From the IMG/VR virus record IMGVR_UViG_3300027759_006101, positions 62,001-126,000 of that record: 64,000 nt of DNA; one strand, given 5' to 3'. Made by a program: the position numbers and the translations under genes. The notes beneath the pieces were generated by a model. The model worked only from the letters and a program-made list of their open reading frames with translations. It searched no databases and had not been told where the DNA came from. Shown here piece by piece: positions 12,637 to 53,183 of this stretch; position 1 is the first letter of the stretch; each line of letters begins with the position of its first letter.

Positions 12637-15492
12637 TTAAGTCTTTTTTCTTATCATATAGGTTAGTTTATCTGCTAACCTATATTCTTTTTTAAAATCT
12701 AGTTTTTGAGCAATTTTTAGCATAGATTTAACAGAAGCTAATACATCTTCATCATCTTCATCATCTTCATCATCATATTCATCTTCATCTTCTTCATCAT
12801 CTTCATCATCTTCATCATCTTCATCATCTTCAATGAGGTTTTGTTGATTTTGTGCTTGTGGTTGATATGGCCTGTTATATTGTTCTTGTCTATCTAATTG
12901 AAATTGTCTATATTCTTCCAATTTTTCTCTTGAAATATTTTGGAATAATTCTGGGTTTTGTTGTTTAAATTGAGGTGTAGTATTCATCAAAGGAATATAT
13001 TCTTTGAATAAATGTGGTTTTTGATTTGCAAAAATAGAAATCATACCAGGAGACAAATACTGTCGTGATGATTGTAAGATTTTGATAAAAGTTTGGTCCG
13101 AAAGTTTATTCAAAACCTCTGGATACCAAGAGATTAATGTTTCAAATTTACTCAAATCCCAAAAACTACTACTTAATTTTTCCAAAAGCTCAAATAATAA
13201 ATTTTCATCATTGTTATTACTAATTAAATTAACAATAAAAGTATTTGGCTTAAGAATTACAATACTTCTCCAAGCTTGACCAGAGTCTAAATATTCTCTT
13301 ATATTCTTAAAATATTTTTCATATTCATTAACATTTGTACGATCTAGCACAAAAGTCATCACGTCTTTACGTGCGTGTGACTTTACAATATTTACAAATT
13401 CATCAGAAGAAGATACTTCTTTTGGAAGATAATCAAAAAACATTGATAATCGTTGATATTGTTTGTCAGAATCTTCATCAACTTCATCTTCATCGTAGTT
13501 ATCATCATCTTCGTCACCTATAGGATGTAAAAGATGAATTTTTTTGAAAACACTACCAACTAATTTATCAAAATATTCGATTGATGTTTTCCAGAATTCA
13601 ATATTATTCTTATCATTAGCATTGACATCTGCATAATCATCCATCAAATAAATAATTCTTGTCAAATTATCCAAAATATTTCCAGGTTGAGATGGTGGAA
13701 GATTTTGATAATCTTTATAATCAAGATAATTTGCTTTATCTACTGCTTTGTAAACTATAAATTCAGGATCGTCCTTAAATTTATCAGGAACAATTTTCCA
13801 TAAATCCGACCATTTAGAAAGCTCATTAACATTAAAGAGCATGTCTATATTATATTTTTCATTTCTTGCTCTTTCTAATAATGGTGCTATTGCTTCTGGA
13901 ATTTGCAATAACAATCTTGTATTTTCTAAAGTTGGGTATTTTTTGTATACGCTTTCTATTCCTTTGATAATAGCTAACTTGTTTACAAATTCATCATTGA
14001 AATCTATTTCGGCATTATTATCAGTGTTTTTGAGTCCAATTTGAGGGAGAGCTATAGACCAGTTTTGAGGAAAATTTCTGAATTGCCCCCCTTTTGAAGA
14101 TCTATCTAAAATCTTTTGCTTTACTTCTTCATTATTAGTGTCAATATATTCGAGGAATGCAAAATTAGTATTTGCACCTTGTTCAACACCAGCAAGTTGT
14201 TGTTTTAAATAAGAATTTAGCAATTGTCTGTTTTTGCTAATTCTATCAGTTTGATTTTTTGGAAGAGTCAAACCAGTATTTACATATTGAACAAGAATAT
14301 TGTTTCCACCAGGAGTATCGAAAAGATAATTGAAAATTCTGTCAGGCAAAATCCAACCTGTTCCAATAAATTTAGACAAATATGTTTTTGCATCATCTGT
14401 CTCAACTATAATTTTTGAATACACTTCCTTAGAAGGATCATTGCCAAAAGGAATTTTAGAGACTATACGTTCTTCAGGTAAAATTAATGGATGATAACCA
14501 CGGACTTCATTTACAAAAGGAATAAATTTTCCTCTTTCTTGTAAAAAATATGCGTTATTTTCTTCAGGTGAAAATTTAATTTCAAATTTTCCCTTATCCC
14601 ACATTCTCAAATCTTCTTCAGTAAAGGGACTTTCACGTTTACCGTAAGCATAAGATTTTACATAATGAGATAATTCAGATATCAATCGCTCCTCTGGAGA
14701 TATGGGTTTGTTTTTTAAGATCTTTTCTTCTTTGCCAGTTTCAGGATTAATTGTTCGAGCGTCAATATTTACGCCTTTGCTCTTCAAATATTTAAGATAT
14801 GTTGGAATGTCTCTTCCGGTAATTGTTCGACCTTTGTACTCAAAAGAAATATCTTCAGTTAATTGTGGACCTGTTCTGTTAACTGTATCAGTGATTTTAA
14901 TATCTTTTGAATTATATTGCAATGCTACTTTTCTTACGTTAGATGTAGGAGGATTTTCATCCCAAACAATAAAAAATGTAGCAGCTTGATTACTTCTATA
15001 ACTTTGCCACATATTATTGGGGCCTTTGTAAGCTATACACCAAGAAGTATCAGCAGCTAAATCTTTGCTGTCCTGTGCTTTTTCTACCTTAAATATTTGT
15101 ATACCATCACCAGTCAAGACAGGAGTATGTTCCGAAATATCTGCTTCAGGTTGTACTTCTTGCTTTTTGACTATTGGGAATTTGCCGTGAACAAAATCTA
15201 TTAGCTCTTCTAAATCATTTAATTGATTATCATTTATAACAACAAAACTTTTAGATACTTTGATATTGGCTGGATTTAATTTTTTAATATTAATATATTC
15301 AGTAAGATGGCTAACAATATCATTAATAGCAAATTCATCAGAATCTCTTGCTAACATCCAAGCAGCAATAGGTTTAAAGACAGAACTATAATTATTTACA
15401 ATTTCTTTATAGCTGTTATAATCTTTTCCAACAGACTTGAAAATTGAAATAAATAATTCTTTATTTGCTATTACTATACGATTATTAAACAT
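12637..15492 (-). CDS. Large orphan protein, paralog of 15485-18511, with C-terminal acidic tract and helical-hairpin tag
   Basis: Shared block T[SR]WCI[AG]YKGPNNMWQSYR...FF.V.D.NPPT.N.RKVAL and NPETG.E.ILKNKP. Ends KIAQKLDFKKEYRLADKLT. Confidence 0.7.
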   Translation of the reverse strand: MFNNRIVIANKELFISIFKSVGKDYNSYKEIVNNYSSVFKPIAAWMLARDSDEFAINDIVSHLTEYINIKKLNPANIKVSKSFVVINDNQLNDLEELIDFVHGKFPIVKKQEVQPEADISEHTPVLTGDGIQIFKVEKAQDSKDLAADTSWCIAYKGPNNMWQSYRSNQAATFFIVWDENPPTSNVRKVALQYNSKDIKITDTVNRTGPQLTEDISFEYKGRTITGRDIPTYLKYLKSKGVNIDARTINPETGKEEKILKNKPISPEERLISELSHYVKSYAYGKRESPFTEEDLRMWDKGKFEIKFSPEENNAYFLQERGKFIPFVNEVRGYHPLILPEERIVSKIPFGNDPSKEVYSKIIVETDDAKTYLSKFIGTGWILPDRIFNYLFDTPGGNNILVQYVNTGLTLPKNQTDRISKNRQLLNSYLKQQLAGVEQGANTNFAFLEYIDTNNEEVKQKILDRSSKGGQFRNFPQNWSIALPQIGLKNTDNNAEIDFNDEFVNKLAIIKGIESVYKKYPTLENTRLLLQIPEAIAPLLERARNEKYNIDMLFNVNELSKWSDLWKIVPDKFKDDPEFIVYKAVDKANYLDYKDYQNLPPSQPGNILDNLTRIIYLMDDYADVNANDKNNIEFWKTSIEYFDKLVGSVFKKIHLLHPIGDEDDDNYDEDEVDEDSDKQYQRLSMFFDYLPKEVSSSDEFVNIVKSHARKDVMTFVLDRTNVNEYEKYFKNIREYLDSGQAWRSIVILKPNTFIVNLISNNNDENLLFELLEKLSSSFWDLSKFETLISWYPEVLNKLSDQTFIKILQSSRQYLSPGMISIFANQKPHLFKEYIPLMNTTPQFKQQNPELFQNISREKLEEYRQFQLDRQEQYNRPYQPQAQNQQNLIEDDEDDEDDEDDEEDEDEYDDEDDEDDEDVLASVKSMLKIAQKLDFKKEYRLADKLTYMIRKKT
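12746..12832 (-). repeat. Low-complexity GAT/GAA repeat encoding a poly-D/E tract
   Basis: TCATCTTCA-type iterations on the + strand. Encodes EDDEDDEDDEDDEEDEDEYDDEDDEDDED. Confidence 0.85.
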
Positions 15493-18400
15493 TGTATTTT
15501 CTCAATATATTTGTAAACTTATCTGCTAACTTGTATTGATAATTAAAATCTAATTTCTGTGCTATTTTCACCATTGATTTTACAAAGGCAGTAATAGGTT
15601 CTTCTTCTTCATCTTCTTCAGTTTCTTCTGACGCAAATGGATCAGGTAATTCTTCTTGTGTCCCAGGCGGTGTAGGTCTTTTGCCTTTCATCACTTTGCC
15701 AGTTTCTTCATCAAAATATCCAGTGCCATATTTTGATTTTCTTTCATATGCAAGAATTCTTGGAGCAAGGTTAGGATACATATGAACTAAAGCTGCCCTT
15801 ATTTCTGGCAATATATCCACATAAACATCTCTCTCTAAAATTCTCGTTTCAAAATATTTAGGATAATTTCTTAATAAATGCAATTGATGATTTAAATTTG
15901 GACGATTTCTAAAATAACTAAATATTCCTAAATTATAAAAATTTGGATCTTCTTTTACTTCTGGATAATGATGTGTATATATATCCAAAAATTCTAACAT
16001 AATATCTGGTGTAAAGTTGTTAAATGAATCAATTTCTTCATCACTAAATTTTCTTTTTTCAAGTATTTTTGAGAGGAATTCAAATGCATAACTTCTACCA
16101 CGATATAATACTCTGTAAAATTCAGATCTTACATTTCTTTCACCATCTAGAAATTGATTTATGTAGTCTTCATATAGCCAAGGTGTTTTTTCAATGTCTA
16201 TATTAGACATAAAATTCTTAGCAGAAATGCTGTTCATTCTTCTCTGCAAAAATTCTTTAATTTCAGGATCTTCTAAAAATTCTTGTGGAATAAACTTTAA
16301 AATGTTTGCAAAATCATTTTCACCAAAATTAAGTTCACTACCTATCCAATCAGCAAAATGATCTATATTCTTAAAGAAATTTTTCCAAAAATTTATATCT
16401 TGTATTGCATTTTGAAATTCTTGGATTGCATCTCTGAAATTTTCTTTTGCTTCATCACTCATCTCTAATTCTTCAAACTTCTTAAATAATTTGCCATCAT
16501 TATAAATAGCCCATAATAAAGTTTGATTTGCATTATTAGGAACAATTTCTTCTGGTCTATCTTTGTATGCGTAGTGTGCGTCTTTTAAGATTGTTTGTTC
16601 GTGTTCTTTAAGATCAAATGCAAAATTTATGGTTGGATTATCACTCCAATCAGAATGGTAACTTTCAGTAAATTCGTCATAATTATTAAAAGAAAATTCA
16701 CGCAAAACATCTACATTTTTAATTTGAGAAATTAACGAAAGATCAAATGGATCGTTAGAATTGTAATATTTAACAATTTTTTCGGAAGGTTTTGGACATA
16801 ATATTGAATACTTTACTTCTTCCAATACCCCAAGTTCTTTTGCTTTTTCAAAATCTTCTGCATTGAAACCAGTTGCCATTGCCACTTCTTTGATAAGTGA
16901 TTTATCCCCTGATTGCAATACGACATTTTTCAAATCTTGTTTTGGAAAAGCCGAAGTAAAATCTACTAAATCTTTATCTGTCAATCTATTTTTTGCATAT
17001 AATAAATATAATTCAGGAAATTTAGGATCTTCGAAAATAAAATTTCGTATACCATTTGGAACAAAAGTTTTTACAGTGCTAATATATTTTATCAACAAAT
17101 CTCTGTCGTTTAAATCCAACAATAAATCGGCATCAGCAGTTTCGGCGTATGTTGAACCTGATTGCAAATAGTCTTTTTCAATCAAAGTTTCAAGATAAAT
17201 TCTCAATAAATCTGGTTTTTTTCTTAAGTCTTGTCTAGCAACTTCATTTATACCGCCCTGTTTTTCAATTAATTGTTTAAATAAATCTTTTCTATTTAAG
17301 TTTATTAAATCAATTTGCATAAGAGGGCTAAATCTTCTACCAGCTATAATTTGACTTCTTAAGTATGAAGTAAGTAAATTTTTGTTATTTCTAAAAAATT
17401 GATATTGCGTTTCAGAAAGTTGCAAACCAGTGTTGACATATTTCATCAACAAATCTTCACCACCAACACTTCTAGATAAATATTCTAAAACTTCATCTTT
17501 TACACGTTTGCCTAAACCCATCCATCTCGAAGTATAGAATTTAGCATCAGGGTTATTAAGGATGTACGCAATACCAGATCTATCTGAAATCTCTTCTATA
17601 ATATCTAAACTATTTTTATCTATTCTTTTTATGTCACTATCTTCGCCATTGACTTTAGATTTTCCAGATTGCCATAAAAGAATATCTTCCACACCCAAAG
17701 CAGCTATATAATTGAATGTGCCATTTTGTAATCTTTCTTCTGTAGTTTTGGGTTTGTTCTTGAGAATTAATTCTTCTTGACCAGTTTCGGGATTTTGTCT
17801 TGTTGCCTGTAAATTAATTCCCTTACCAGTCAAGTATTCAGAATATTTATCCCAATCCCATCCATTTGAAAGTTGATGTCCTGTCATATTTGGAATGTCT
17901 GTTAATAAAACATTACCTGAAGCAAAATCAAGAGCAACTTTTCGTTGATTTTCTGTAGGAGGATTATTATCAAAAACTACAAAAAAAGAAGCATCGTGCG
18001 AATCTCTATAAGATTGCCACATATTATTTGGGCCTTTATAGCCGATACACCATCTTGTATCATCACCAACTAATCTTCTACCATCGTTGGCATCATTTAT
18101 CTCAAATATCTTAATGGAATTATCTTTATTTGCTACAACAGGAACATCTTCAATTTCAGTATTTTCAGCCTGTTTTTCAGCTTGCAAAATAGGAAATTGA
18201 GCGTGGATATATTCTGTTAGTTTAATTGCATCATCAAAAACTTTATCGTTTATTTTGACAGCTTTTGCGCCAACTGAATATTTAGTAATTCTTCTTGAGT
18301 CAATATATTTTTGTATAGCTTCAATATATTCATTTGGTTCAATATTACGGGCCAATAACCAAGCAGCAAATACTTGATACTTTTGATCATATTGCTTTAC

Positions 18401-18511
18401 TGTTTCTCTTAAGTCTTGATAATATTCTGCATCTTTGCCCAAATGATTACAAATACCTTGAATATCTTCTTTTATGCCAGCTGTAACAATCCTGAGACTA
18501 TACCTTTTCAT
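15485..18511 (-). CDS. Large orphan protein, paralog of 12637-15492, with C-terminal helical-hairpin tag
   Basis: 1008 aa. N-terminal ~270 aa aligns by eye with its neighbour. Ends KIAQKLDFNYQYKLADKFT. Confidence 0.7.
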   Translation of the reverse strand: MKRYSLRIVTAGIKEDIQGICNHLGKDAEYYQDLRETVKQYDQKYQVFAAWLLARNIEPNEYIEAIQKYIDSRRITKYSVGAKAVKINDKVFDDAIKLTEYIHAQFPILQAEKQAENTEIEDVPVVANKDNSIKIFEINDANDGRRLVGDDTRWCIGYKGPNNMWQSYRDSHDASFFVVFDNNPPTENQRKVALDFASGNVLLTDIPNMTGHQLSNGWDWDKYSEYLTGKGINLQATRQNPETGQEELILKNKPKTTEERLQNGTFNYIAALGVEDILLWQSGKSKVNGEDSDIKRIDKNSLDIIEEISDRSGIAYILNNPDAKFYTSRWMGLGKRVKDEVLEYLSRSVGGEDLLMKYVNTGLQLSETQYQFFRNNKNLLTSYLRSQIIAGRRFSPLMQIDLINLNRKDLFKQLIEKQGGINEVARQDLRKKPDLLRIYLETLIEKDYLQSGSTYAETADADLLLDLNDRDLLIKYISTVKTFVPNGIRNFIFEDPKFPELYLLYAKNRLTDKDLVDFTSAFPKQDLKNVVLQSGDKSLIKEVAMATGFNAEDFEKAKELGVLEEVKYSILCPKPSEKIVKYYNSNDPFDLSLISQIKNVDVLREFSFNNYDEFTESYHSDWSDNPTINFAFDLKEHEQTILKDAHYAYKDRPEEIVPNNANQTLLWAIYNDGKLFKKFEELEMSDEAKENFRDAIQEFQNAIQDINFWKNFFKNIDHFADWIGSELNFGENDFANILKFIPQEFLEDPEIKEFLQRRMNSISAKNFMSNIDIEKTPWLYEDYINQFLDGERNVRSEFYRVLYRGRSYAFEFLSKILEKRKFSDEEIDSFNNFTPDIMLEFLDIYTHHYPEVKEDPNFYNLGIFSYFRNRPNLNHQLHLLRNYPKYFETRILERDVYVDILPEIRAALVHMYPNLAPRILAYERKSKYGTGYFDEETGKVMKGKRPTPPGTQEELPDPFASEETEEDEEEEPITAFVKSMVKIAQKLDFNYQYKLADKFTNILRKYNV

Positions 18512-23044: not shown

Positions 23045-23431
23045 CTATAGGGCAAATTTTATATCAATTGCAAAGATTCTTGTAGATATTCCCTTAGTTT
23101 TTTTTCCAGCAACTTCTGCATGATATTCTGACTGTCTGCACACTAATACAGATCCATTTGTAAGGCTTTCAACTTCTCTACTTGCAAGCCTAAAAGCAGA
23201 CATTACAGAATTGAGAGCAGTAGGACCAACACTTAAAATTCTGACATATTCATGATCTTTCAAAACGTGCAAAATGCTTCTACTTAAACCTACAGGATCG
23301 GTTGGCCTTCTACTAGGGTCTTCACTGTTAGGATCTCCTCCTCGGGCCTTTAAGATTCTAGGGTCGTTAATTTTATTCTTTGATTTATCATTTGTTGCAA
23401 TAGTGCTAACAGGATCTTCTAACTTTTCCAT
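23045..23431 (-). CDS. spoVS: SpoVS-like protein (Alba-like fold)
   Basis: ILK...DPVGLSRSILHVLKDHEYVRILSVGPTALNSVMSAFRLA...LVC...EVAGKKTKGI parallels SpoVS ILKV...PNSVAGALAGVLRERGAAEIQAIGAGALNQAVKAVAIA...LIC...IDGEERTAI. Confidence 0.7.
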   Translation of the reverse strand: MEKLEDPVSTIATNDKSKNKINDPRILKARGGDPNSEDPSRRPTDPVGLSRSILHVLKDHEYVRILSVGPTALNSVMSAFRLASREVESLTNGSVLVCRQSEYHAEVAGKKTKGISTRIFAIDIKFAL

Positions 23432-23433
23432 TT

Positions 23434-24408
23434 TTAATTTTCCTCTAAGCCAATAATTGATAATTTTGACTTAATATTTTCTACAGCGTTATTGAACTCT
23501 ATAGCAGTGCAATTGTATAATTTTGAATCAAACTTCAATTTAGACGAACCGTTCAAAATATTGTTAATAATTTTTGTTTCGACATCAGACATTGTCAAGT
23601 TTAATAAATCATTTACTTTATTTGAATCTTTGATATTGTCGTAATAACAAACATCTTCATTTTCATCTTCCTCGGACATATAAACACTTAAAGCCCTTGG
23701 AGAAACTGTCTGATGGTTAGGATGCAACTCATTGAACTTTTGAAATAACATACTCGAGTGCTTTGAAAGAATATGTTTTTTAATTACGGCAGTTCTTTTT
23801 TCAATCATACATTTTTCACAAGCGCCATCAACTTTATCTTTACAATCATCTGAACAATCATATGATCTTGGCATTTTGTGATTTTTACAAAAAGGACATC
23901 TTTCTAAATCTTCTAAAATAATCCCTGTGTTCTTTAAGTGATCCCAAAGAATATGATGATGATGATTGAGGATATGAGTGGAAAGTGGATTTACCCATTT
24001 TTCACAAATTGGGCATTTTTGAGTTGGATTTCTTTTACCAGCATTGTCAGCTTTTACTAAGTTGATATAGTTATGCTGAAGCGCTCCAATAAAATAATTT
24101 TTGAATTCACCACTACCGCCATATCTAGAAATTTTTCTAGTATTGCGTGGTTTCCAATTTGATAAAACATTGCAGAATATTTTAATATAATCTGAGGCAA
24201 AATCTTCTTGAGAGTCGTACAAATAATGATACTGACTCCACCACTCTTGCATGTGTAAATAAGGAGGATAGAGCTTACAAACTTCTTTGTATCCTCTATC
24301 TATCTTCCATTTATTTCCGGTTAATAAAGAATCTTGATAACGAAGTATTGCCTTTTCTAAGTTTTCTTGATTTTTCAACTTAATTTGTTTTGTAATATCC
24401 TGTTCCAC
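23434..24408 (-). CDS. Sigma-factor-like protein with inserted Cys/His zinc-finger region
   Basis: Region-2-like DFASDYIKIFCNVLSNW...EFKNYF...YINLVK...KR, then CPICEKWVNPLSTHILNHH, CPFC..H, C..C, HILSKH, then a degenerate region-4-like end. Confidence 0.45.
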   Translation of the reverse strand: MEQDITKQIKLKNQENLEKAILRYQDSLLTGNKWKIDRGYKEVCKLYPPYLHMQEWWSQYHYLYDSQEDFASDYIKIFCNVLSNWKPRNTRKISRYGGSGEFKNYFIGALQHNYINLVKADNAGKRNPTQKCPICEKWVNPLSTHILNHHHHILWDHLKNTGIILEDLERCPFCKNHKMPRSYDCSDDCKDKVDGACEKCMIEKRTAVIKKHILSKHSSMLFQKFNELHPNHQTVSPRALSVYMSEEDENEDVCYYDNIKDSNKVNDLLNLTMSDVETKIINNILNGSSKLKFDSKLYNCTAIEFNNAVENIKSKLSIIGLEEN

Positions 24409-24459
24409 AGTAGAACTCCTGAATATTACAATTATACTTTAATAACTTTAAAAGTAAAC

Positions 24460-26250
24460 TTATGCTGATTTTATATCTTCTATTATCATCACCAGATTAT
24501 TATTACCAGACCAGTTATCAAGTTCAAGGGTGTAAACTACGTCAACTTTATCGCCTGGTTTGAATTCGTTACAAATATATCCACGTCTCCAAGCATTAGC
24601 AGAAACCCAAGTCTTTTCACCATTTGACAACTTAAGCTTAGCGTGTTTGCCTTGTGTAAGAGATTTAGCTTCAACAAGAGTCATATTCTTAGTGATGAAT
24701 ATTGGATTATGGTTTCCACTTCCAAAAGGAGATATTTTCGATAGATGAACATATGTTTTTATATTCAAATCACTAAAAGGCATACGAGCATCAATATCAA
24801 TAATTTTCTCACTACTTGGTTCACCTAATTTATCTTGAGCATAATTATTTAATGCTTTTCTCATTGCTGGAATATTGTCTATCGGAAGTTCAAAACCAGC
24901 AGCAAAAGCATGACCTCCACAAACAGTACTACCATCTGCTCTTTTCTTAAATAATTTCCAAGCTTCTTCTGACTTAAGAGCATCCAAGATATTAAAATCT
25001 CGAGTAGAACGACAAGAGCCTTTAGCATATCCATCTTTTTTAAATGAACAAACCAGAGTAGGCTTATTGTACATTTCTGCAATTTTGCCAGCAATAAGAC
25101 CAATCAATCCTGGGTGCCAATCTTCTTCACCCAAAATCAATATATGCTCTTTCTCTAAATCAAAATTTCTCTCAACAAAATCAATTGCCTGTTGAGTAGC
25201 TTTTTCTTGCTGTTCTTGGCGGCGAGTGTTAGCGTTGTTCATCTGCTTGGCTAGATTAGCTGCTGTAATGTCATCTTTTGAAAGCATCAAGCTCAAAGCA
25301 GTGCCAGCATCAGCAAGTCTACCTATGGCATTGATTCTTGGGCCAATTTGAAAGCCAATAGTCGTGGGAGTAACATCTTTTACTCCAGCTATACGAAGAA
25401 GTTCTTTGATTCCAGGTTTGTTACTGTTTGAAAGAATTGAACAGCCATAATTTACAATAACTCTGTTCTCATCAATCATTGGGGCAACGTCAGCAACAGT
25501 GCCTAATGCTGCAAATTCAATAAGTTCATCAACAAATTCATAAACATTAAGTTTACGATAACGGGCTAATCCGAGCATCAATTTAAAAGCAATTCCACAA
25601 CCAGCCAAATAATCAAATGGATAGCGCTCAAAACTATCTTTCTTATGTGACTTAAAATGCTCTCCTGGATAGAAAGGATCGTCTCTGTTAGGATTGACTA
25701 CTGCCATTGCTTCAGGCAACGATCCATCTTCACTAGGATGATGGTGATCAGTAATAATCAAGTCAAGATTTTTCTCTTTTGCATATGCCCCAGTTTCAAA
25801 AGCAACAATTCCACAGTCAACACTCATAAGAAGAGTTGCACCAGAAGCCAAAGCCTGATCGACAGAATGAATCTTGATATCGTATCCATCTTCCATCCTA
25901 TGAGGGACTTTGTATTCTATATTTGCTCCCATTTTTTCAAGAGCAGTAACAACAATAGCCGTAGAAGTAATTCCATCTACGTCATAATCTCCCCAGACAA
26001 ATATTTTCTCTCCAGAGTCAATTGCTTTACTTATGCGTTTTATAGCTATGTCAGCATCAGGCAAAGACATTGGGTTGTGAAGTTTTTTGATTTTCAAGTC
26101 AAGGAATTGCTCAGCTTTTTTCACTGAATCAATACCACGAGTCATCATAACTTGAGCAATTGACAATGGCACTTCAAGTTCACAGGCAAGTTCTTTGACT
26201 GAACTCATATCACAACTACGCATTTTCCAAACTGTTTCTATTTTATCCAT
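24460..26250 (-). CDS. recJ: Single-stranded DNA exonuclease RecJ
   Basis: GDYDVDGITS, RMEDGY, VDCG, ITDHH (DHH), GTVADV, GPRINAIGR, GSCRS, GGHAFAAG, PFGSGNHNP. Confidence 0.95.
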   Translation of the reverse strand: MDKIETVWKMRSCDMSSVKELACELEVPLSIAQVMMTRGIDSVKKAEQFLDLKIKKLHNPMSLPDADIAIKRISKAIDSGEKIFVWGDYDVDGITSTAIVVTALEKMGANIEYKVPHRMEDGYDIKIHSVDQALASGATLLMSVDCGIVAFETGAYAKEKNLDLIITDHHHPSEDGSLPEAMAVVNPNRDDPFYPGEHFKSHKKDSFERYPFDYLAGCGIAFKLMLGLARYRKLNVYEFVDELIEFAALGTVADVAPMIDENRVIVNYGCSILSNSNKPGIKELLRIAGVKDVTPTTIGFQIGPRINAIGRLADAGTALSLMLSKDDITAANLAKQMNNANTRRQEQQEKATQQAIDFVERNFDLEKEHILILGEEDWHPGLIGLIAGKIAEMYNKPTLVCSFKKDGYAKGSCRSTRDFNILDALKSEEAWKLFKKRADGSTVCGGHAFAAGFELPIDNIPAMRKALNNYAQDKLGEPSSEKIIDIDARMPFSDLNIKTYVHLSKISPFGSGNHNPIFITKNMTLVEAKSLTQGKHAKLKLSNGEKTWVSANAWRRGYICNEFKPGDKVDVVYTLELDNWSGNNNLVMIIEDIKSA

Positions 26251-27007
26251 TGTTTTTTCTTATGATTATCTTATCTCTGCCCAATTCAATAGTTTCTAAA
26301 ATTACTTCATCTAATTTTGATAATGAGTTGTTTCTAGCAAGATCGTCTGGGTCCATACCATCACACAAATAAATACTAATTACATTTATTTGAAGATTTT
26401 TTATTGTTTCAATTGCTTTCTCTGTAGCTATTCTTCCAGGGTAATCACCATCCATCAATAAACAGATATTATCGCAATACCTTGAGGCTAGTGCTACTTG
26501 ACATTCATGTAGAGATGTGCCACATATAGCAGCAACATTTTCTATGCCTTTATCATACAATGAATAGACATCAAAATATCCTTCGGTTAATATGATGTAA
26601 TTTTTTTCTCTAGCTTTGTCTTTTGCTACATCAAGAAAAAATAAATTTCTATTTTTTTGATAAGGTTCATTAATCCATTTTCCTCTTTTCCACTTATCAA
26701 TTCTATCTTGGCATTTAGCAGGTTCATTGCCAAAGCTATTCCACATTGCTTCGATAGTTATCTCTTCTAATTCTGGAATTTGTCTACCAGCTAAAGCAAT
26801 AATTTCTCCGTATACATTTTTTATAGGAACAATTAATCTACCTTTTAGATAAGGAAAACTATATCTAGAGAACGGAGGACAAAAAGCTACCAATTTGTTT
26901 TCAGTAATCTTTTCTGAAAGATGTCTAGTTTTAAAATATTCTTGAACAACTTTATTTTCATCATAGTTGCGCAAAAATTGATTGTAGTTCAATTCAAAGC
27001 TGTTCAT
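26243..27007 (-). CDS. dnaG: DnaG primase catalytic core (TOPRIM) without its zinc-binding domain
   Basis: RLIVPI...IIALAGR, TEGYFDV, AAICGTSL, LMDGDYPGRIA, GMDPDD. Start moved to the ATG at 27007. Confidence 0.85.
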   Translation of the reverse strand: MNSFELNYNQFLRNYDENKVVQEYFKTRHLSEKITENKLVAFCPPFSRYSFPYLKGRLIVPIKNVYGEIIALAGRQIPELEEITIEAMWNSFGNEPAKCQDRIDKWKRGKWINEPYQKNRNLFFLDVAKDKAREKNYIILTEGYFDVYSLYDKGIENVAAICGTSLHECQVALASRYCDNICLLMDGDYPGRIATEKAIETIKNLQINVISIYLCDGMDPDDLARNNSLSKLDEVILETIELGRDKIIIRKNNG

Positions 27008-27085
27008 CAAACAAATTGTATCATTAAAGGTAAGAATAATCATCTACAAAGAAATAAAGAATATCATTTTATTCAAGGTTTAAGA

Positions 27086-28456
27086 ATGGATAAATTTCAG
27101 AAACTTTCACAATTATCAAAAGAAATACAAATTTTAGAGACTGCAGGTAAAATTAAGGCAGCAGAAGTCCTTCATAAAAAATTCATCAAGGAATCACAAT
27201 ATATGATGCCACAAATGATGCCTATGATGATGATGCCTCAAATGATGCCTCAAATGATGCCTCAAATGATGCCTCAAATGATGATGGCAAGACCAACAGC
27301 TACTGTCGCTCCAGCTGCAGTAGCTAGACCAGTTGTCAATCAAACTCCAACTTCGGCACCTACACCAGTAGTTGCTCCAACTCCAGTACAGCAAGGGCAG
27401 ACAGGGCAAACTGGGCAAGTTACGCCTCCTGCTCAATCTACGACACCTCCTACTACACAGCCACCTGTAGTAAACCCACCTGTGACAACTCCTCCTCCTA
27501 TGCCTATTGATAAAGTTAAGAGACAATACGGTGATGGTCAATCAAAAAATGAAGAGTTGCAATATCTTGATAAAGAGAAAAGAAGACTAGAAGAATTAGG
27601 TTACAATGATCCCAAAAGCCCCTTTTATCAACAGTATCTGACTATTATTGGTATGATAAATAGAAATAAAGGCGGCTCAATAATCAAAAAGAGTGAAAAT
27701 ATGAACAAATTACAAAAGTTAGCACAATTAAATAAAGATATTGAATTATTAGAAAACGCTGGAAAGTTCAAAGCAGCTGAAATTTTACAAAAGAAATTAC
27801 TTAAAGAAGCACAAACTTTTGGTTATGGTGACACAAGTAGTAATTTTGATGCTCCTGGATATTCTGGACCAAGACAAGATATGCCTGACACATATGCAAA
27901 CGTAGAACTTAATGAACAAATAAGACAGAATTTAAGAAATAATAAACAACAAAATCCTTCAACTCAAACATCAAATCCTACTGAGTCTGATACAGCTAAT
28001 GTAAATGCTTTCAATGAAGGTATGTATGGTCAAATAAACCCTTTATCTTCAACTTCACAGCTTGATTACAAGACATTAATCAACCAAGCAAAAAATTACA
28101 TTGCGAGTGGTGATATGAATACAGCTGCTCAAATTAAGCAGCAAGCATTAAATTCTAGTATGACTCCTCAACAAAAAGCAGCGTTTCAACAGCAATACAA
28201 CACTATAGTTCAAAATTATTCCAATACAGCTAATAACCCTGAAGCATTTCAGTCGCAAGAAAATGCTCAGAATGCAATCGCTAAAGCTGCTCAATCACTG
28301 GGCATAAACACAAATGATCCACAAGCAATAAGAAAGAATGAATTAAAACTGAGAAGCAAATTACAGCAAATGGGATTACTAAAAGATAAAAATGTCCAAA
28401 GTTTACTAAGACAAATTTCTTTAAGAGGTTACTATATACAGAACCCTAATAAGTAA
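27086..28456 (+). CDS. Low-complexity orphan protein made of two tagged modules
   Basis: MDKFQKLSQLSKEIQILETAGKIKAAE (27086) is repeated as MNKLQKLAQLNKDIELLENAGKFKAAE (27701). M/P/Q/T-rich. Start moved to the ATG at 27086. Confidence 0.65.
   Translation: MDKFQKLSQLSKEIQILETAGKIKAAEVLHKKFIKESQYMMPQMMPMMMMPQMMPQMMPQMMPQMMMARPTATVAPAAVARPVVNQTPTSAPTPVVAPTPVQQGQTGQTGQVTPPAQSTTPPTTQPPVVNPPVTTPPPMPIDKVKRQYGDGQSKNEELQYLDKEKRRLEELGYNDPKSPFYQQYLTIIGMINRNKGGSIIKKSENMNKLQKLAQLNKDIELLENAGKFKAAEILQKKLLKEAQTFGYGDTSSNFDAPGYSGPRQDMPDTYANVELNEQIRQNLRNNKQQNPSTQTSNPTESDTANVNAFNEGMYGQINPLSSTSQLDYKTLINQAKNYIASGDMNTAAQIKQQALNSSMTPQQKAAFQQQYNTIVQNYSNTANNPEAFQSQENAQNAIAKAAQSLGINTNDPQAIRKNELKLRSKLQQMGLLKDKNVQSLLRQISLRGYYIQNPNK
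27203..27286 (+). repeat. 12-bp tandem repeat ATGATGCCTCAA encoding (MMPQ)n
   Basis: Four near-perfect consecutive units plus degenerate flanking units. Confidence 0.9.
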
Positions 28457-30819: not shown

Positions 30820-31596
30820 TTAAATTCTTGAATTTCTAGTCCGAACTGTAGCCTGATTCCTATTTATAGGAGTTTTATCTTTCGAAAAAAGATTGGACAT
30901 ACCCTCTTGATTGAAGGAATGATTGATTCTTGAAAGCGCTTGATGCTCTCGTAAAATTCTGTCCATTTGACTTGCTGCAAATTCAATATTTTTTAGATAA
31001 TGCTCCAAATATGTTAGCAGCCTTTTGGAGTTTGTCATCGGAATGACAAATGGGTGAACAGTGAAAGCAGCATTTGCTTCTTTATCTTTCGCTGTTCCTG
31101 ATGATAATCTGATAGCCATTTCTCTAAGATTTTTATGTGCTTGAGAAATCATTTCATAATGTGCATAAACTACAGAAATTATTTCTGTCAATCTGTTTCT
31201 ATATTGAACTTGTAATGCATATGAAGCAGAAAATGATTCAAAATCATAGTCATCTTTAGTAGGAATTGCAATATCCCATTTTCTAACTTCATTTCTAATC
31301 TCAAGTTCATCATAAATTGGCAAAAGACTAATAGCATCTTGCCAATTTTGCACTTCTTTAGCAAAACTTTCTTCGCTAATACCTTTGAGACGACTAACTA
31401 AATCTTTGGAAAAGTTAGGATCTTGCCAGGAAATACTTTCTGGCATAGGAGCCCAATCTAAATTAGCTACAAGGATAGAATTTTCTTCATCATATCCCTC
31501 TTCGCCCTCAGACTTAATGACAAAATCTTCATTGGCGTAGTCTGCATAATCATCAAAATCTAAATCTTCCATAGCATCCTCAATCGAATAATTCAT
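30820..31596 (-). CDS. Hypothetical helical protein, possible UvsY-like recombination mediator
   Basis: Long amphipathic helices with the SGTAKDKEANA motif. Position next to the ssb-like gene and recA. Confidence 0.35.
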   Translation of the reverse strand: MNYSIEDAMEDLDFDDYADYANEDFVIKSEGEEGYDEENSILVANLDWAPMPESISWQDPNFSKDLVSRLKGISEESFAKEVQNWQDAISLLPIYDELEIRNEVRKWDIAIPTKDDYDFESFSASYALQVQYRNRLTEIISVVYAHYEMISQAHKNLREMAIRLSSGTAKDKEANAAFTVHPFVIPMTNSKRLLTYLEHYLKNIEFAASQMDRILREHQALSRINHSFNQEGMSNLFSKDKTPINRNQATVRTRNSRI

Positions 31597-34500
31597 CGCT
31601 CAAAAGGTGATTGGAAACTCTTGCAGTGTTTAATTGTTTCTTTTCACCACTTACAATACTATCATAGGACATTGAGTTTTTTTCAGCAAGTTTTCTTAAT
31701 CTTAAGGCTTGTTTTTCCTCACGAGATCTATCTAAAACTAACTGGTCCCAATGTAAAAGAAAATCTTCTACATACTCAAATTCATCAGCATCAGGCAAAC
31801 AGCACAAAGCATTAGCTTCAGCTAGTGCAGCAACAGTGCCTCTATTAGGTCTTGCTCTGTAACAAAAATCTTTAATGTCTTCATAAGGCTGGCTTTCAAC
31901 AATTTCAACTGATCTTGTTCCAACTCCTTTGATAGTCGATAATGGAAGTAAAATTTCACCTTTTTTATTGACACTTGTCTCAACACCAGACTCATTAATG
32001 TTTGGGTTTTTGATAGGTATTCTTTCCATATCGCATTCTCTTCTTAAGACTGCAACTTTATCTTCATCAAGCCTATCAATTTGTATACAAGCAGCAAGCC
32101 ACTCAGAAGGGTAATAATTACGCAAATAAGCTGTGTAGTATGATAAAAGTGCATATGAGCAAGCGTGTGACCTATTGAAAGCATATCCTCCGAATTTTGC
32201 CATCAATGCAAGAACTTCATCAATCACTTCTTTAGATATTCCGTTTTCAGCACTTTTAGAAGCAAATAAACTACAAACCTCATCAAAATCCTTGCCAGAT
32301 TTTTTAGAAATAGCTTTGCGTAATTTGTCTACTTGCTGCCAAGTAAAGCCTGCCATATCACGAGCCAAAAACATTGCTTGCTCCTGATACACCATAATTC
32401 CGTATGTCACTGAAAGATGTTTTTCAATAATGGGATGAGCATATTGAATTGTTTCAGGATGCCTTTTACCTTCAGCATACTGTGGAATATAATCCATAGG
32501 ACCTGGACGATAAAGTGCTGCAACAGCAATTAAATCTTCAACACTAGAGGCATTGACATCTCGTAAAGCTTGTTGCATTCCTTTAGAAGCAAATTGAAAA
32601 ACTGAAGCTGTTTTACCTTTCGCATAAATATTCTTGAAAATCTTCTGGTCATCAAGATTTATTTTTTTGAAATCGATTTCTTTATTGTGAAGTCGTTTGA
32701 TATGTTGCAAACACAAAGAAACTTGCTGGAATGCTGCTAAGCCCAAAAAGTCATATTTTACAAGGCCTACACGTTCTACATTCTTCATATCGTATGCAGA
32801 ACACAAGTTGCCTTTTGAGTTTTCGATAGGTGCGTGATAAGAAATTGGTTCTGAAGATACAAGCACTCCAGAAGCGTGGACACCAAAGTTAGAAATAGTT
32901 CCAACTAAATGAATTGCATTATCAATTTCAGGTTTCCATTTCCTGTAGTACATCTTGAAATCTTCATTTTCAATAAGAGTATCTTCAATAGTAGAGCCTG
33001 GTTTTTTAGAAATCAATGCAGAGATATTTAGTGCCTGGTTATGAAAATCATCAGGATATTTTGCCTGAAATCTTTCGGATGATTTTAGACAACCAACAAC
33101 AGCGGCTTTTGCACCATATCTTCCCCAAGTACCAATTTGCGCAACGTGGTCATCACCAAAACGGTCTTTGGTCCAATCAATAACTTCTGAACGCCTAGAA
33201 TCGTCAATATCTGTATCAACGTCAGGAAGAGCAGCAACTTTAGAGACAATTAAACCAGACTCAGGCTTTTCATCAGTTATTCCTAATATATGAGCGGTCC
33301 AAAGTTGTGATTCATTCGTTTGGGTTTTTATGCCTAATTTAGCTAAACCATAAATATACGAAGACAAGCCTTGATTCTCTAATACCCACAATTCTTTTTC
33401 GATATCAGGTTCATACTTTTGATATTGCGGAAAATGCTCAAGCCACTTTTGAGTGTACTTCTTGAGTTTTTTAGTGTATGGAATTTGTTCTTGATCACCA
33501 TATTCAGAAAGAAATTGTGAATGTGGGAACTCAGAAATATCAATCTTGTATTGAGTGCCTCTTCCAGGATTCAAAAAACGTTCAAACATCAAGTTCCAGC
33601 GAACAGGATCTACATTGCAAACTTCAAGACAAAAGTTCACTAAAGAACCTACCCCAGAACCACGAATTCCAAAGTGAATATTCTTTTGTTTTAAGAATTC
33701 AACCATTTCTCTTTGAATTAAAAAATAGTCTGTAACACCCATATACCAAATTTGTTTAAGTTCATAATTCAAACGTTCAAGATATGTTCTATTAAATAGA
33801 CCGGCAGCTTTCAAACCATTCAAGCACAAGTAAGCAAGATACGCCTCATTATCTTTATGATAAGGAAGCTTTGAATTCTTAAATGCAGCAAATTCTGGAT
33901 TAGTGACTGGTACTTTTGCCGATGGTAATAAGTGAGGTACATCAAGCTTGAAAAAATCTTCCACCATCTCTGATATAAGTACAGAATTCTTCAAAGCTTC
34001 AGGAACTTGAGCACCAAATATTTTATGCATTTCATCATAAGACTTCAGATAAAATTGATGGCTGCCGTAAGCTTCTTTCTTACCGCCACCTTTTCTGTCA
34101 GTCCTAGAGTCACGTTGATCCCTCATTTGAATTAAGACATCGTGAATAGTCCAGTCTAATTTATCTAAATAATGAACATCATTTGAAGCGACCAATGGCA
34201 CATCAAACTTTTTAGCAACATTAAGTAAATGCTGCATATTGTGTTTTTGTTCTTCTATTCCATGATATTGAAGTTCAACAAAATATCTATTGCCAAAAAC
34301 ATTCTTGAAACGTGACGCAATTTTATTTGACTGTTCTAAATCTTCCTTGATTATAGATTGATTAAGTTCAGATGCTAAGCAGCCAGATAAAGCAATCACA
34401 CCTTCACTATGCTTTTCGATGCATCCCCAGTCTACACGAGGAGAGTAATGAAAAGCATCAGGATCATTACCAATAGCAGATAACGCTAATAAATTTTTAT

Positions 34501-34819: not shown

Positions 34820-34860
34820 AACAATCCATTCTATAAGCGCCGTCAAAGACAGTCATTCAC

Positions 34861-53127: not shown

Positions 53128-53132
53128 TTTAG

Positions 53133-53166
53133 AAAAGAGAATTGAAACTATATCAATTCTCTTTTT
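53133..53166. terminator. Intrinsic terminator-like hairpin
   Basis: AAAAGAGAATTGA-N7-TCAATTCTCTTTT-T after the nuclease stop. Confidence 0.75.
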
Positions 53167-53183
53167 GTTATAATTTATTTAGT

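What the first reader, a model, noticed from the sequence alone, without database searches (positions are those of the whole stretch)
23434..24408. Sigma-like protein with zinc fingers spliced between region 2 and region 4
Seen: the N-terminal half follows the sigma region-2 pattern and parallels the SigH-like protein (D...I.....V..[WY]...K....FKN[YF]......A.KR). It is followed by CPIC-x10-HILNHH, CPFC..H, additional Cys pairs and HILSKH, then a D/E-rich region-3-like segment and a weak region-4-like end. Inference: an unusual sigma or sigma-derived activator that uses C2H2-like fingers for promoter recognition. I know no described sigma with this layout.
Basis: inference. Interest (0 to 1): 0.7.

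Follow-up and report, generated by a model that had tools for sequence, protein, structure and literature searches.

The report
Phage sigma factor carrying zinc fingers
A conserved gene of a group of uncultured giant phages most likely encodes a very divergent RNA-polymerase sigma factor in which a compact two-zinc-finger domain sits where sigma region 3 normally lies, a layout I found described for no sigma factor.

Summary
The ORF is real: window 23434-24408, minus strand, 324 aa, GTG start behind an AGGAG and a conserved TTTAC[AT]-N16/17-TATAAT promoter. C132/C135/H145/H150 and C171/C174/H212/H217 are invariant in 29 homologues down to 37% identity.

No Pfam, PHROG or PDB sequence search names it. 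Six independent weak-to-moderate lines agree on a sigma-70-type layout:
- predicted fold (sigma-2 at residues ~12-126, sigma-4 at ~263-320);
- profile-profile alignment to two bona fide sigma families of the same phage, in one register (P 5e-4 and 3e-3);
- sub-threshold Sigma70_r2/r4 hits in remote relatives;
- language-model neighbours;
- sigma chains filling the top of three fold libraries;
- a predicted complex with the beta' clamp helices through the region-2.2-like helix (0.66 against 0.00 for controls).

The 100-residue zinc module folds confidently but matches no known fold. It is followed by an acidic disordered linker.

The family is confined to huge-phage contigs and always lies RecJ -> this gene -> SpoVS-like gene.

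That the fingers read promoter DNA is untested, and their near-neutral charge does not favour it. Verdict: a new variant of a known kind. Interest is moderate to high.

The parts
23434..24408 (-). Whole ORF, 324 aa (P0001) plus stop codon. This is the sigma-like protein with the inserted zinc module.
   Evidence: It has 107 homologue clusters and 36 IMG/VR loci.
24431..24458 (-). Promoter-like site of the gene itself: TTTACT (24453-24458), a 16-nt spacer, then TATAAT (24431-24436).
   Evidence: Sequence read. TTTACA-N17-TATAAT stands at the same place in relatives with 59-93% identity.
24416..24420 (-). AGGAG, resembling a Shine-Dalgarno site, 7 nt before the GTG start at 24406-24408.
   Evidence: GGAG or GGAGG is conserved before a GTG start in relatives.
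24031..24375 (-). Residues 12-126: sigma region 1.2/2-like helical domain.
   Evidence: VIA-align matches: SigW Z 7.4 (rmsd 2.6, 90 residues), SigI6 7.8, SigA sigma-2 7.1, T4 gp55 chain 6.5. hhalign P 4.8e-4 and 3.1e-3 to genuine phage sigma families. Language-model neighbours: 65 of 100 in the Sigma70_r2 set.
24157..24210 (-). Residues 67-84: region-2.2-like helix (QEDFASDYIKIFCNVLSN), the predicted contact with the beta' clamp helices.
   Evidence: complex prediction: target residues 65-83 and 28-41 touch beta' 292-319. D69, F70 and F78 are invariant.
24031..24156 (-). Residues 85-126: the most conserved stretch of the family. It comprises the basic loop WKPRxxRxxSRYxGSGE and the helix FKNYFIGALQHNYINLVKA..KR. 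It lies where sigma regions 2.3/2.4 read and melt the -10 element.
   Evidence: Invariant residues W85, P87, R91, S94, G98, G100, F102, F106, L110, N116, K119, R126. Mean net charge is +2.7 for the loop and +3.9 for the helix. The DNA role is inferred.
23929..24021 (-). Residues 130-160: zinc finger 1, with ligands C132, C135, H145 and H150. A beta hairpin plus helix is predicted.
   Evidence: zf-Di19 or C2H2 profiles match weakly in 14 and 8 of 29 members.
23725..23904 (-). Residues 169-228: zinc finger 2, with ligands C171, C174, H212 and H217, followed by two helices.
   Evidence: In the shortest relatives this finger is also C-x2-C-x8/9-H-x4-H.
23806..23862 (-). Residues 183-201: optional cysteine-rich insert inside finger 2 (C185, C189, C197, C200). 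Possibly a third metal site.
   Evidence: Present in 14 to 22 of 29 members and absent in the short forms. Metal binding is inferred only.
23623..23703 (-). Residues 236-262: acidic, disordered linker.
   Evidence: pLDDT below 50 at residues 237-261. Net charge is -6 here and -4.9 on average over the family.
23449..23622 (-). Residues 263-320: sigma region-4-like helical domain with an acidic 'recognition' helix.
   Evidence: VIA-align Z 6.1 to SigA region 4 (6ono_B, model residues 262-324). A second, collinear hhalign hit with P 0.04. Charge.
23437..23466 (-). Residues 315-324: conserved C-terminal tail, KLSIIGLEEN (family consensus KM[ST]LxGLEG).
   Evidence: Its function is unknown. The clamp-binding idea was not tested.
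23045..23431 (-). Downstream partner gene, 128 aa, SpoVS-like. It starts 2 nt after the target's stop codon.
   Evidence: Pfam SpoVS E 0.074 and PHROG 'sporulation protein' E 0.0075. It is found immediately downstream of the target in every IMG/VR locus. The neighbours of two remote relatives (P0147, P0165) are clear SpoVS (E 2.8e-56 for P0147's); P0134 is followed by an RNA-ligase gene instead.
24460..26250 (-). Upstream neighbour: RecJ-like exonuclease. This is conserved context, not part of the protein.

Best explanation
The gene encodes a highly divergent phage sigma factor of the sigma-70 superfamily. It redirects the host's core RNA polymerase.

Proposed roles by segment:
- Residues ~12-126 are a sigma-2 domain. 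The helix at 67-84 docks on the beta' clamp helices. The very conserved basic loop and helix at 85-126 handle the -10-like element.
- Residues ~128-230 are a compact module held by two invariant Cys2His2 sites, with an optional third cysteine-rich site. It occupies the place of sigma-3.
- Residues 236-262 are an acidic, disordered linker that would run through the RNA exit path as sigma 3.2 and ECF linkers do.
- Residues 263-320 are a sigma-4-like domain that would sit on the beta flap.

Timing. The gene has its own promoter of sigma-A consensus type and lies in the replication module. I therefore infer that it is made early and switches on a later gene class.

Zinc module. Its most likely job is to act as a rigid substitute for sigma-3. 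It would contact either spacer or extended -10 DNA, or an RNAP or partner surface.

What is shown and what is inferred. Shown in silico: the folds, the conservation, the synteny and a predicted beta' interface. Inferred: zinc binding, core binding in reality, promoter specificity and timing.
For: 1. Fold. The AF2 model has mean pLDDT 81.8.
- An unbiased VIA-align search of 48,161 chains puts sigma factors on top: SigB Z 8.6 over residues 14-323, SigI6 7.8, SigW sigma-2 7.4 at rmsd 2.6, SigA sigma-2 7.1, sigma-32 6.9, T4 gp55 chain 6.5, SigA region 4 at Z 6.1 for residues 262-324.
- About 34 of Foldseek's first 35 PDB hits are sigma chains.
- About 24 of the first 30 Swiss-Prot models are sigma factors.
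- Phage sigma factors lead in BFVD.

2. Profile-profile comparison.
- The family alignment A2 against the Pfam-positive ECF-like sigma family of the same phage (A3) gives P 4.8e-4 for regions 1.2-2.2. A second, collinear hit for region 4 has P 0.04.
- Against the SigH-like family (A5) the result is P 3.1e-3 in the same register, including FKN[YF].
- As a yardstick, the two genuine families score only P 1.5e-5 against each other.

3. Remote relatives found by a profile search of 1.84 billion proteins.
- P0165 hits Sigma70_r2 (E 1e-3).
- P0166 hits Sigma70_r4_2 (E 0.01) at the expected ends.

4. PDB sequence search with A2: S. aureus SigB, E 0.03.

5. Language-model neighbours: 43 of 100 named hits carry Sigma70_r2. 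For residues 1-130 the figure is 65 of 100.

6. Predicted complex with Flavobacterium johnsoniae beta' residues 150-420.
- Score 0.66, best of 3 controls 0.00.
- The mark was reached by 58 of 80 solved complexes and 2 of 110 mismatched pairs.
- The runs agree in at least 87% of contacts, and the partner's pLDDT is at least 77.
- The contacts are target residues 28-41 and 65-83 with a beta' helical hairpin at 292-319.

7. The phage needs host RNAP. There is no RNAP beta profile hit and no DFDGD motif in the 358 kb held. It carries four ordinary sigma genes.

8. The gene has its own conserved promoter and a Shine-Dalgarno-like site.
Against: - No curated profile reaches its threshold for any of the 29 members.
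- Every single structural or profile score is middling: Z 6-8.6, Foldseek E 0.05-3, hhalign probability 10-32%.
- The complex predictor may pass from memory of solved sigma/beta' complexes. A pass therefore shows likeness, not binding. The host and its beta' are unknown.
- The sigma-4-like recognition helix is acidic in zinc-bearing members (-2 to -5). The fingers are near neutral. Canonical -35 reading is therefore doubtful, and a DNA role for the fingers is unsupported.
- No promoter motif could be assigned.
- The constant position inside the replication and recombination gene block would also fit a replication protein.
Confidence: 0.7

Rival explanations
1. It is a sigma mimic that binds the beta' clamp helices but does not initiate transcription. 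It would act as a decoy, an anti-host-sigma factor or an RNAP modifier that shuts off or retargets host transcription.
For: - The sigma-4-like recognition helix is acidic and the fingers are near neutral.
- The phage already has four ordinary sigma factors.
- The predicted beta' interface fits a competitor as well as a sigma.
Against: - The best-conserved and most basic part is the loop and helix at residues 85-126. This is where sigma reads and melts the -10 element. A mere blocker would not need it.
- The full collinear sigma-2...linker...sigma-4 layout is kept over large sequence distances.
Confidence: 0.12
2. It is a replication or recombination accessory protein, for example an origin-, primer- or ssDNA-binding factor built on zinc fingers. 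On this view its N-terminal helical bundle only resembles sigma-2.
For: - The gene is always embedded in RecA - primase - nuclease (RecJ or PD-(D/E)XK) - target - SpoVS-like. This holds even for relatives with less than 25% identity.
- Helical bundles give middling Z scores easily (tool note).
- No curated sigma profile passes.
Against: - Six independent methods converge on sigma, in the same register.
- The complex with beta' scored 0.66 against 0.00 for the controls.
- A C-terminal domain matches sigma-4.
- Phage regulators often sit inside replication modules.
Confidence: 0.1
3. It is a true sigma, but the zinc module is a regulatory switch rather than a structural or DNA-reading part. The module would be a metal or redox sensor, or a docking site for a partner such as the SpoVS-like neighbour.
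For: - Known sigma factors with cysteine-rich parts use them as sensors. Examples are CorE-type ECF238, with a CxC in the linker plus a C-terminal Cys-rich domain (PMC8999054), and OrbS (PMC9023288).
- The module is not basic.
- The gene pair with SpoVS-like is conserved.
Against: - Cys2His2 sites with invariant ligands and a confident compact fold (pLDDT 88, pTM 0.75) look structural.
- The ZAS motif HxxxCxxC is absent.
- The Zn-less relatives P0165, P0168 and P0175 have strongly basic C-terminal domains instead (+11 to +16). This hints at a trade-off in DNA contacts rather than in sensing.
Confidence: 0.2

Closest known systems
Group 4 (ECF) sigma factors, e.g. B. subtilis SigW, E. coli sigma-E
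   Same: - Two helical domains, sigma-2 and sigma-4, joined by a flexible acidic linker, with no sigma-1.1.
- The best single-domain structural fit is SigW sigma-2: rmsd 2.6 A over 90 residues.
- The pattern D-x-ED-[F]...W/F...P then F-x-x-[YW]-[FL]...N...K/R resembles ECF regions 2.1-2.4.
   Different: - About 136 residues lie between the two domains. ECF Hub allows at most 50 (PMC7826278).
- No Sigma70_r2 or Sigma70_r4 Pfam hit.
- The loop before the region-2.3-like helix is 17 residues long.
- A folded zinc domain sits in the linker.
Group 3 sigma factors (SigB, SigF, sigma-32, FliA)
   Same: - Overall length and three-part order.
- The best whole-chain matches are S. aureus SigB (Z 8.6) and Streptomyces SigF or B. 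subtilis SigB models.
- SigB is also the only sigma found by sequence in the PDB (E 0.03).
   Different: The middle domain is not the three-helix sigma-3. On its own it matches nothing: VIA best Z 3.2, Foldseek E above 1.
T4 late-transcription set: gp55 (sigma-2-like) + gp33 (sigma-4-like, acidic, non-DNA-binding) + gp45 clamp
   Same: - A phage sigma remote from Pfam models. The gp55 chain 7d7d_F matches at Z 6.5 with the highest identity among the sigma-2 hits (16%).
- An acidic flap-type C-terminal domain and a conserved hydrophobic C-terminal tail.
- The phage encodes its own clamp and clamp loader.
   Different: - One polypeptide instead of two, and it carries a zinc module.
- The phage clamp is of the bacterial beta type.
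- Clamp binding was not tested.
- Details of the T4 system are from my own knowledge, not from a tool.
Sigma factors with cysteine-rich parts: CorE-type ECF238, OrbS, and ECF48/52/53 with fused ZAS domains
   Same: Metal-ligand motifs inside a sigma polypeptide (PMC8999054, PMC9023288).
   Different: - In those proteins the parts are C-terminal extensions or a bare CxC in the linker, and they act as sensors or anti-sigma domains.
[quoted passage not shown]
- HxxxCxxC is absent here.
C2H2-type fingers: Pfam zf-Di19 and zf-C2H2_4; prokaryotic Ros/MucR
   Same: - CPxC...H-x4-H ligands, with a beta hairpin plus helix predicted for finger 1.
- zf-Di19 is the commonest weak hit, in 14 of 29 members. 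It reaches its cut-off in the remote relative P0147 (27.6 bits against 27.5).
   Different: - The knuckle-to-His spacing is 9 residues, not 12.
- The two fingers pack into one globule.
- Finger 2 can carry a 28-residue cysteine-rich insert.
- The Ros structure matches only at Z 2.5.

Membership tests
sigma-70 superfamily | Sigma-2 helical fold in the N-terminal half | tested here: met
   This rests on a predicted structure only. Residues 11-126 align to many sigma-2 structures, for example SigW (Z 7.4, rmsd 2.6), SigI6, SigA, SigC, RpoS and sigma-E.
sigma-70 superfamily | Significant match to the curated profiles Sigma70_r2 (PF04542) and Sigma70_r4 or r4_2 (PF04545, PF08281) | tested here: not met
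   None of 29 members matches, even at E up to 10. Only remote relatives come near: P0165 with 19.3 bits against a cut-off of 24, and P0166 with 16 bits against 25.7.
sigma-70 superfamily | Profile-profile homology to bona fide sigma families, collinear for regions 2 and 4 | tested here: inconclusive
   hhalign gives P 4.8e-4 (region 2) and 0.04 (region 4) against A3, and P 3.1e-3 against A5. Probabilities are 32% and 10%. The genuine-against-genuine control gives P 1.5e-5.
sigma-70 superfamily | Region 2.2 helix binds the beta' clamp coiled-coil of core RNAP | tested here: met
   Tested in silico only. ipSAE was 0.66 and the best of 3 controls 0.00. The mark was reached by 58 of 80 solved complexes and 2 of 110 mismatched pairs. 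The runs agree in at least 87% of contacts, and the partner's pLDDT is at least 77. Helix 65-83 contacts beta' 292-319. The pass may reflect memory of solved complexes. I did not align the beta' residue numbers to the E. coli clamp helices.
sigma-70 superfamily | C-terminal sigma-4 helix-turn-helix that binds the beta flap and the -35 element | tested here: inconclusive
   The fold matches SigA region 4 at Z 6.1, but also OmpR-type DNA-binding domains. The recognition helix is acidic in this clade.
sigma-70 superfamily | Confers promoter-specific initiation on core RNAP | not testable with these tools
   This needs biochemistry. A motif search gave no assignable promoter class.
ECF (group 4) sigma as defined by ECF Hub | [quoted passage not shown] | tested here: not met
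   About 136 residues separate the two domains and neither has a Pfam hit. The definition is taken from PMC7826278.
T4 gp55-type late sigma | Sigma-2-only protein with a C-terminal sliding-clamp-binding tail, working with gp33 | not tested
   There is a structural match to the gp55 chain at Z 6.5 and a conserved tail. The protein has its own sigma-4-like domain.
Classical C2H2 zinc finger | C-x2-4-C-x12-H-x3-5-H ligands on a beta-beta-alpha unit | tested here: inconclusive
   The ligands are invariant but the spacing is x9. A beta hairpin plus helix is predicted. The zf-Di19 and zf-C2H2_4 hits are sub-threshold in this clade. No structural match was found. Zinc content was not measured.
ZAS anti-sigma domain | H-x3-C-x2-C motif | tested here: not met
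   The motif is absent from P0001 and present in only 1 of 29 members.

The most novel reading that the evidence does not exclude
This would be a natural single-chain late sigma in which a double Cys2His2 domain has replaced sigma-3. On this reading the zinc domain, not the acidic sigma-4, supplies the upstream promoter contact. The factor would be tied to replication, as in T4, through its conserved C-terminal tail and the phage's own beta clamp and/or the SpoVS-like partner. It would then be one polypeptide doing the work of gp55 plus gp33, with a zinc-finger DNA reader. That would be a new way for a sigma to recognise promoters.
Probability: 0.15. Interest if true: 0.85.

Novelty: new variant of a known kind. 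Interest (0 to 1): 0.62.

Why it matters
Sigma factors are among the best-catalogued bacterial proteins, and their domain grammar (1.1, 2, 3, 4) is taken as fixed. The known additions are N- or C-terminal sensor extensions.

- A conserved family with a folded zinc-finger domain in the sigma-3 position would widen that grammar.
- It would also give a natural precedent for sigma/zinc-finger chimeras, which synthetic biology so far builds by hand.
- It shows that profile-based annotation misses regulators of huge phages: 107 clusters, none of them named.
- The constant pairing with a SpoVS-like gene inside the replisome block points to an unstudied regulatory unit. This unit may couple transcription to replication in phages that carry a bacterial-type Pol III replisome.

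Tried and rejected
- tblastn of the protein against 50,697 GenBank phage records found no match.
- Pfam and PHROG scans of the protein gave nothing meaningful.
- hmmsearch of PDB sequences with the close-family alignment A1 found nothing. With A2, SigB ties with a bromodomain at E 0.03, so this line is weak taken alone.
- hhalign against single sigma sequences was too weak to use.
- BLASTP against the SigH-like protein was not significant.
- Fold searches with the zinc module alone gave no credible match in PDB by Foldseek, by VIA-align wide search, or in the AFDB clusters. I therefore do not call it sigma-3, Ros-like or any named fold.
I repeated it with A1.
- Promoter hunt. 8-mer enrichment recovered only a promoter class of sigma-A type. 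A dyad search with 5-mers and gaps of 12-20 gave nothing above shuffled sequences. No promoter can therefore be assigned to this factor.
- Clamp-binding tail idea. Only one other ORF of the genome ends in a similar tail (G000 52631-53497...LSMLGLGN). It has no Pfam hit and no likeness to the family. The idea stays a speculation.
- Own phage RNAP. There is no RNAP beta profile hit and no DFDGD motif. The two large unannotated ORFs in the window have no PHROG or Pfam hit. I rejected a phage RNAP as the partner, with the caveat that the record is estimated 89% complete.
Full report
**What is there**

The finding's coordinates hold one ORF on the minus strand, 23434-24408, of 324 aa (P0001). It starts with GTG at 24406-24408. 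AGGAG lies 7 nt upstream, and TTTACT-N16-TATAAT stands in the 51-nt gap after recJ. In relatives with 59-93% identity the same gap holds TTTACA-N17-TATAAT, GGAG(G) and a GTG start. The gene therefore has its own promoter of sigma-A consensus type.

The window is bases 62001-126000 of a 358-kb IMG/VR virus record. The record has about 33% G+C.

- CPIC 132-135 and HILNHH 145-150.
- CPFC 171-174 and HILSKH 212-217.
- Extra cysteines at 185, 189, 197 and 200.
- SEEDENED at 245-252.

**Conservation and distribution**

A word-indexed search of 5.8 billion proteins found 107 clusters. None carries a Pfam domain in the family itself, and none has a name beyond 'hypothetical'.

In 29 sequences with 37-93% identity, the eight ligands C132/C135/H145/H150 and C171/C174/H212/H217 are invariant. 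So is a long stretch, W85-P87-R91-S94-G98-G100-F102...N116-K119-R126. The four extra cysteines occur in only 14 to 22 of the 29.

An exhaustive profile search of 1.84 billion representatives widened the family to 72 proteins. In the shortest forms both fingers read C-x2-C-x8/9-H-x4-H. The cysteine-rich piece in the window's protein is therefore an insert inside finger 2.

Distribution:
- IMG/VR holds 36 loci on contigs of 21 to 479 kb. Seven contigs exceed 260 kb.
- Among 185,579 species genomes only two short contigs of one MAG match. They carry the same phage genes.
- GenBank phages have no homologue.

**Context**

The order recJ -> target -> SpoVS-like gene is kept in every IMG/VR locus that reaches far enough.
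- At 47% identity the wider block is Pol III alpha - RecA - primase - RecJ - target - SpoVS-like - RNR.
- Three relatives below 27% identity still show RecA and/or primase, then a nuclease or an unnamed gene, then the target. A clear SpoVS gene follows in two of the three (P0147 and P0165; in P0147's locus Pfam E 2.8e-56). P0134 is followed by an RNA-ligase gene instead.
- The phage encodes a bacterial-type replisome: Pol III alpha with PHP domain, beta clamp, clamp loader, DnaB, DnaG-type primase.
- It has four ordinary sigma-70-family genes with Sigma70_r2 and Sigma70_r4_2 hits.
- It has no RNAP beta profile hit and no DFDGD motif.

It must therefore use the host's core polymerase.

**Is it a sigma?**

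No curated profile says so. The close-family profile finds nothing among PDB sequences. The case rests on convergence of independent, individually modest results.

(a) Fold.
- The AF2 model built on the alignment has mean pLDDT 81.8. The only low stretch is 237-261.
- A Foldseek-independent scan of 48,161 PDB chains ranks S. aureus SigB first (Z 8.6, residues 14-323).
- It then lists sigma-2 domains of SigI6, SigW (rmsd 2.6 A over 90 residues), SigA, ShbA, sigma-32, pro-sigma-K, the T4 gp55 chain, SigC, RpoS and sigma-E.
- SigA region 4 matches residues 262-324 at Z 6.1.
- The other rows at similar Z are two-helix hairpins that match only residues 1-48.
- Foldseek's lists are filled with sigma chains in PDB, Swiss-Prot models and BFVD, although E-values stay between 0.05 and 3.

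(b) Profile-profile comparison.
- The wide family alignment A2 aligns to the ECF-like sigma family of the same phage (A3) with P 4.8e-4 over regions 1.2-2.2.
- In a second, collinear alignment it matches that family's region 4 with P 0.04.
- It aligns to the SigH-like family (A5) with P 3.1e-3.
- The two genuine families reach only P 1.5e-5 with each other at this alignment depth.

(c) Remote relatives hit Sigma70_r2 (P0165, E 1e-3) and Sigma70_r4_2 (P0166, E 0.01) at the expected ends.

(d) A PDB sequence search with A2 finds SigB at E 0.03. This ties with an unrelated bromodomain.

(e) Language-model neighbours are mostly sigma clusters.

(f) A complex prediction of residues 1-130 with Flavobacterium johnsoniae beta' residues 150-420 passed.
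- Score 0.66, best of 3 controls 0.00.
- The mark was reached by 58 of 80 solved complexes and 2 of 110 mismatched pairs.
- The runs agree in at least 87% of contacts, and the partner's pLDDT is at least 77.
- The interface uses residues 28-41 and the helix at 65-83. That helix is the one aligned to region 2.2 of real sigma factors.
- The beta' side is a helical hairpin at 292-319.

This pass may partly be memory of solved holoenzymes, and the true host is unknown. I read it as 'the model treats this domain as a sigma-2 that fits the clamp helices', not as proof of binding.

**The middle and the end**

- Residues 124-238, folded alone with 38 homologues, give a confident compact model (pLDDT 88, pTM 0.75). 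It has a hairpin plus helix for finger 1 and two long helices after finger 2.
- The module matches nothing: VIA best Z 3.2, Foldseek E above 1 in PDB and in 2.3 million AFDB clusters. A scatter of C2H2 proteins appears among the insignificant rows.
- By sequence, zf-Di19 is the commonest weak hit (14 of 29 members). It reaches its cut-off in remote relatives.
- The module is thus a new packing of two C2H2-like sites, not sigma-3.
- The following 27 residues are acidic (-6) and disordered.

Charges by domain:
- The sigma-2 loop and helix are basic (means +2.7 and +3.9).
- The fingers are near neutral (means -0.9 and +1.6).
- The sigma-4-like domain and its last helix are acidic in zinc-bearing members.
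- In the three zinc-less relatives (P0165, P0168, P0175) the C-terminal domain is strongly basic (+11 to +16).

This inverse pattern suggests that upstream DNA contacts were re-allotted when the zinc module arose. It does not show that the fingers took them over.

**Mechanism proposed**

- The gene is made early from a sigma-A-type promoter.
- The protein binds host core through the helix at 67-84.
- It reads and melts a -10-like element with residues 85-126.
- It places the zinc module where sigma-3 sits.
- It threads the acidic linker through the exit path.
- It seats the sigma-4-like domain on the flap.

Steps shown in silico are the folds, the conservation, the synteny and the beta' interface. 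All else is inference. I give this 0.7.

The rivals are a non-initiating sigma mimic (0.12) and a replication accessory protein with a look-alike bundle (0.10). Within the sigma reading, a sensor or docking role for the zinc module rather than a structural or DNA role gets 0.2.

**Comparison with what is known**

[quoted passage not shown] This protein fails both tests.
- Group 3 sigma factors have sigma-3, which is absent here.
- Sigma factors with cysteine-rich parts (CorE/ECF238, OrbS, ZAS-fused ECF48/52/53; PMC8999054, PMC9023288) carry them as C-terminal sensors or as a bare CxC.
- A survey of 224 jumbo phages describes minimal and RpoD-like phage sigma factors and gp33. It mentions zinc ribbons only as separate proteins (PMC7824862).
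- Three full-text searches found no sigma with C2H2 fingers.

I therefore rate it a new variant of a known kind.

**Limits**

- Every score is moderate.
- The coordinates of the models could not be inspected for ligand geometry.
- The host is unknown.
- No promoter could be assigned.
- The clamp-tail idea was not tested.

Noticed in passing
G000 bases ~154,000-198,000 (outside the window); one instance in the window upstream of ORF 60482-60937(-): A promoter class of sigma-A consensus type, TTGAC(A)/TTGCA - N17 - TGnTATA(A/C)T, lies before about 20 small genes. The -10 element often ends only 6-8 nt before the ATG, so these early transcripts may be leaderless. Together with the GGAG sites, this argues for a host whose primary sigma reads TTGACA/TATAAT. 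By my own knowledge that is not typical of Bacteroidota, although the RNR genes look flavobacterial-phage-like.
   Followed up: partly
window 23045-23431 (-): A SpoVS-like gene of 128 aa, with a low-complexity N-terminus of about 40 residues, starts 2 nt after the target's stop codon. It is kept next to the target in every IMG/VR locus and in two of three remote relatives checked, and it is more conserved than the target (43-94% against 39-93%). It is possibly a functional partner.
   Followed up: partly
window 2302-2868 (-) and its family (alignment A3): This Pfam-positive ECF-like phage sigma ends in a conserved L-G-E-D-F-L-F/x tail. From memory, that is reminiscent of the clamp-binding tails of T4 gp55 and gp33. 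The target family has its own conserved tail, KM[ST]LxGLEG. This may hint at clamp-coupled transcription in a phage with its own beta clamp.
   Followed up: partly
window 3879-5036, 7354-8415, 26243-27043, 31580-34846, 36507-38078 (all -): The phage carries a full bacterial-type replisome: beta clamp, clamp-loader ATPase, DnaG-type primase lacking the zinc-binding N-terminus, Pol III alpha with PHP domain, and DnaB. It also has RecA, RecJ, class I RNR, dUTPase and a shortened adenylosuccinate synthetase (4973-5968).
   Followed up: partly
window 12637-15492 (-) and 15485-18511 (-): Two overlapping large ORFs of 951 and 1008 aa have no Pfam or PHROG match at all.
   Followed up: no
window 26921-28456 (+): This 511-aa ORF lies on the opposite strand to its neighbours and overlaps the start of the primase gene. 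It contains a run of (P)QMM repeats, a proline/threonine-rich stretch, and a twice-repeated segment KLQKL(A/S)QL(S/N)K(E/D)I..LE.AGK.KAAE.L.KK. It could be a real low-complexity protein or an ORF artefact.
   Followed up: no
L046, L047 (JALRHN010000152.1 and JALRHN010000253.1, MAG 'Candidatus Kapaibacterium sp. MYJ.27'): These are the only 'cellular' genome hits of the family. They are 5.1-kb and 2.1-kb contigs carrying recJ - target - SpoVS-like - RNR beta at 58-80% identity. They are most likely phage contigs binned into a MAG, or a host hint.
   Followed up: partly
remote relatives P0165, P0168, P0175 (no window coordinates): These zinc-less members of the wider family keep the N-terminal domain and, where checked (P0165), the position before a SpoVS gene. 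They have no Cys/His ligands and a strongly basic C-terminal domain. They may be the ancestral or alternative form, and are useful for dating the insertion of the zinc module.
   Followed up: partly
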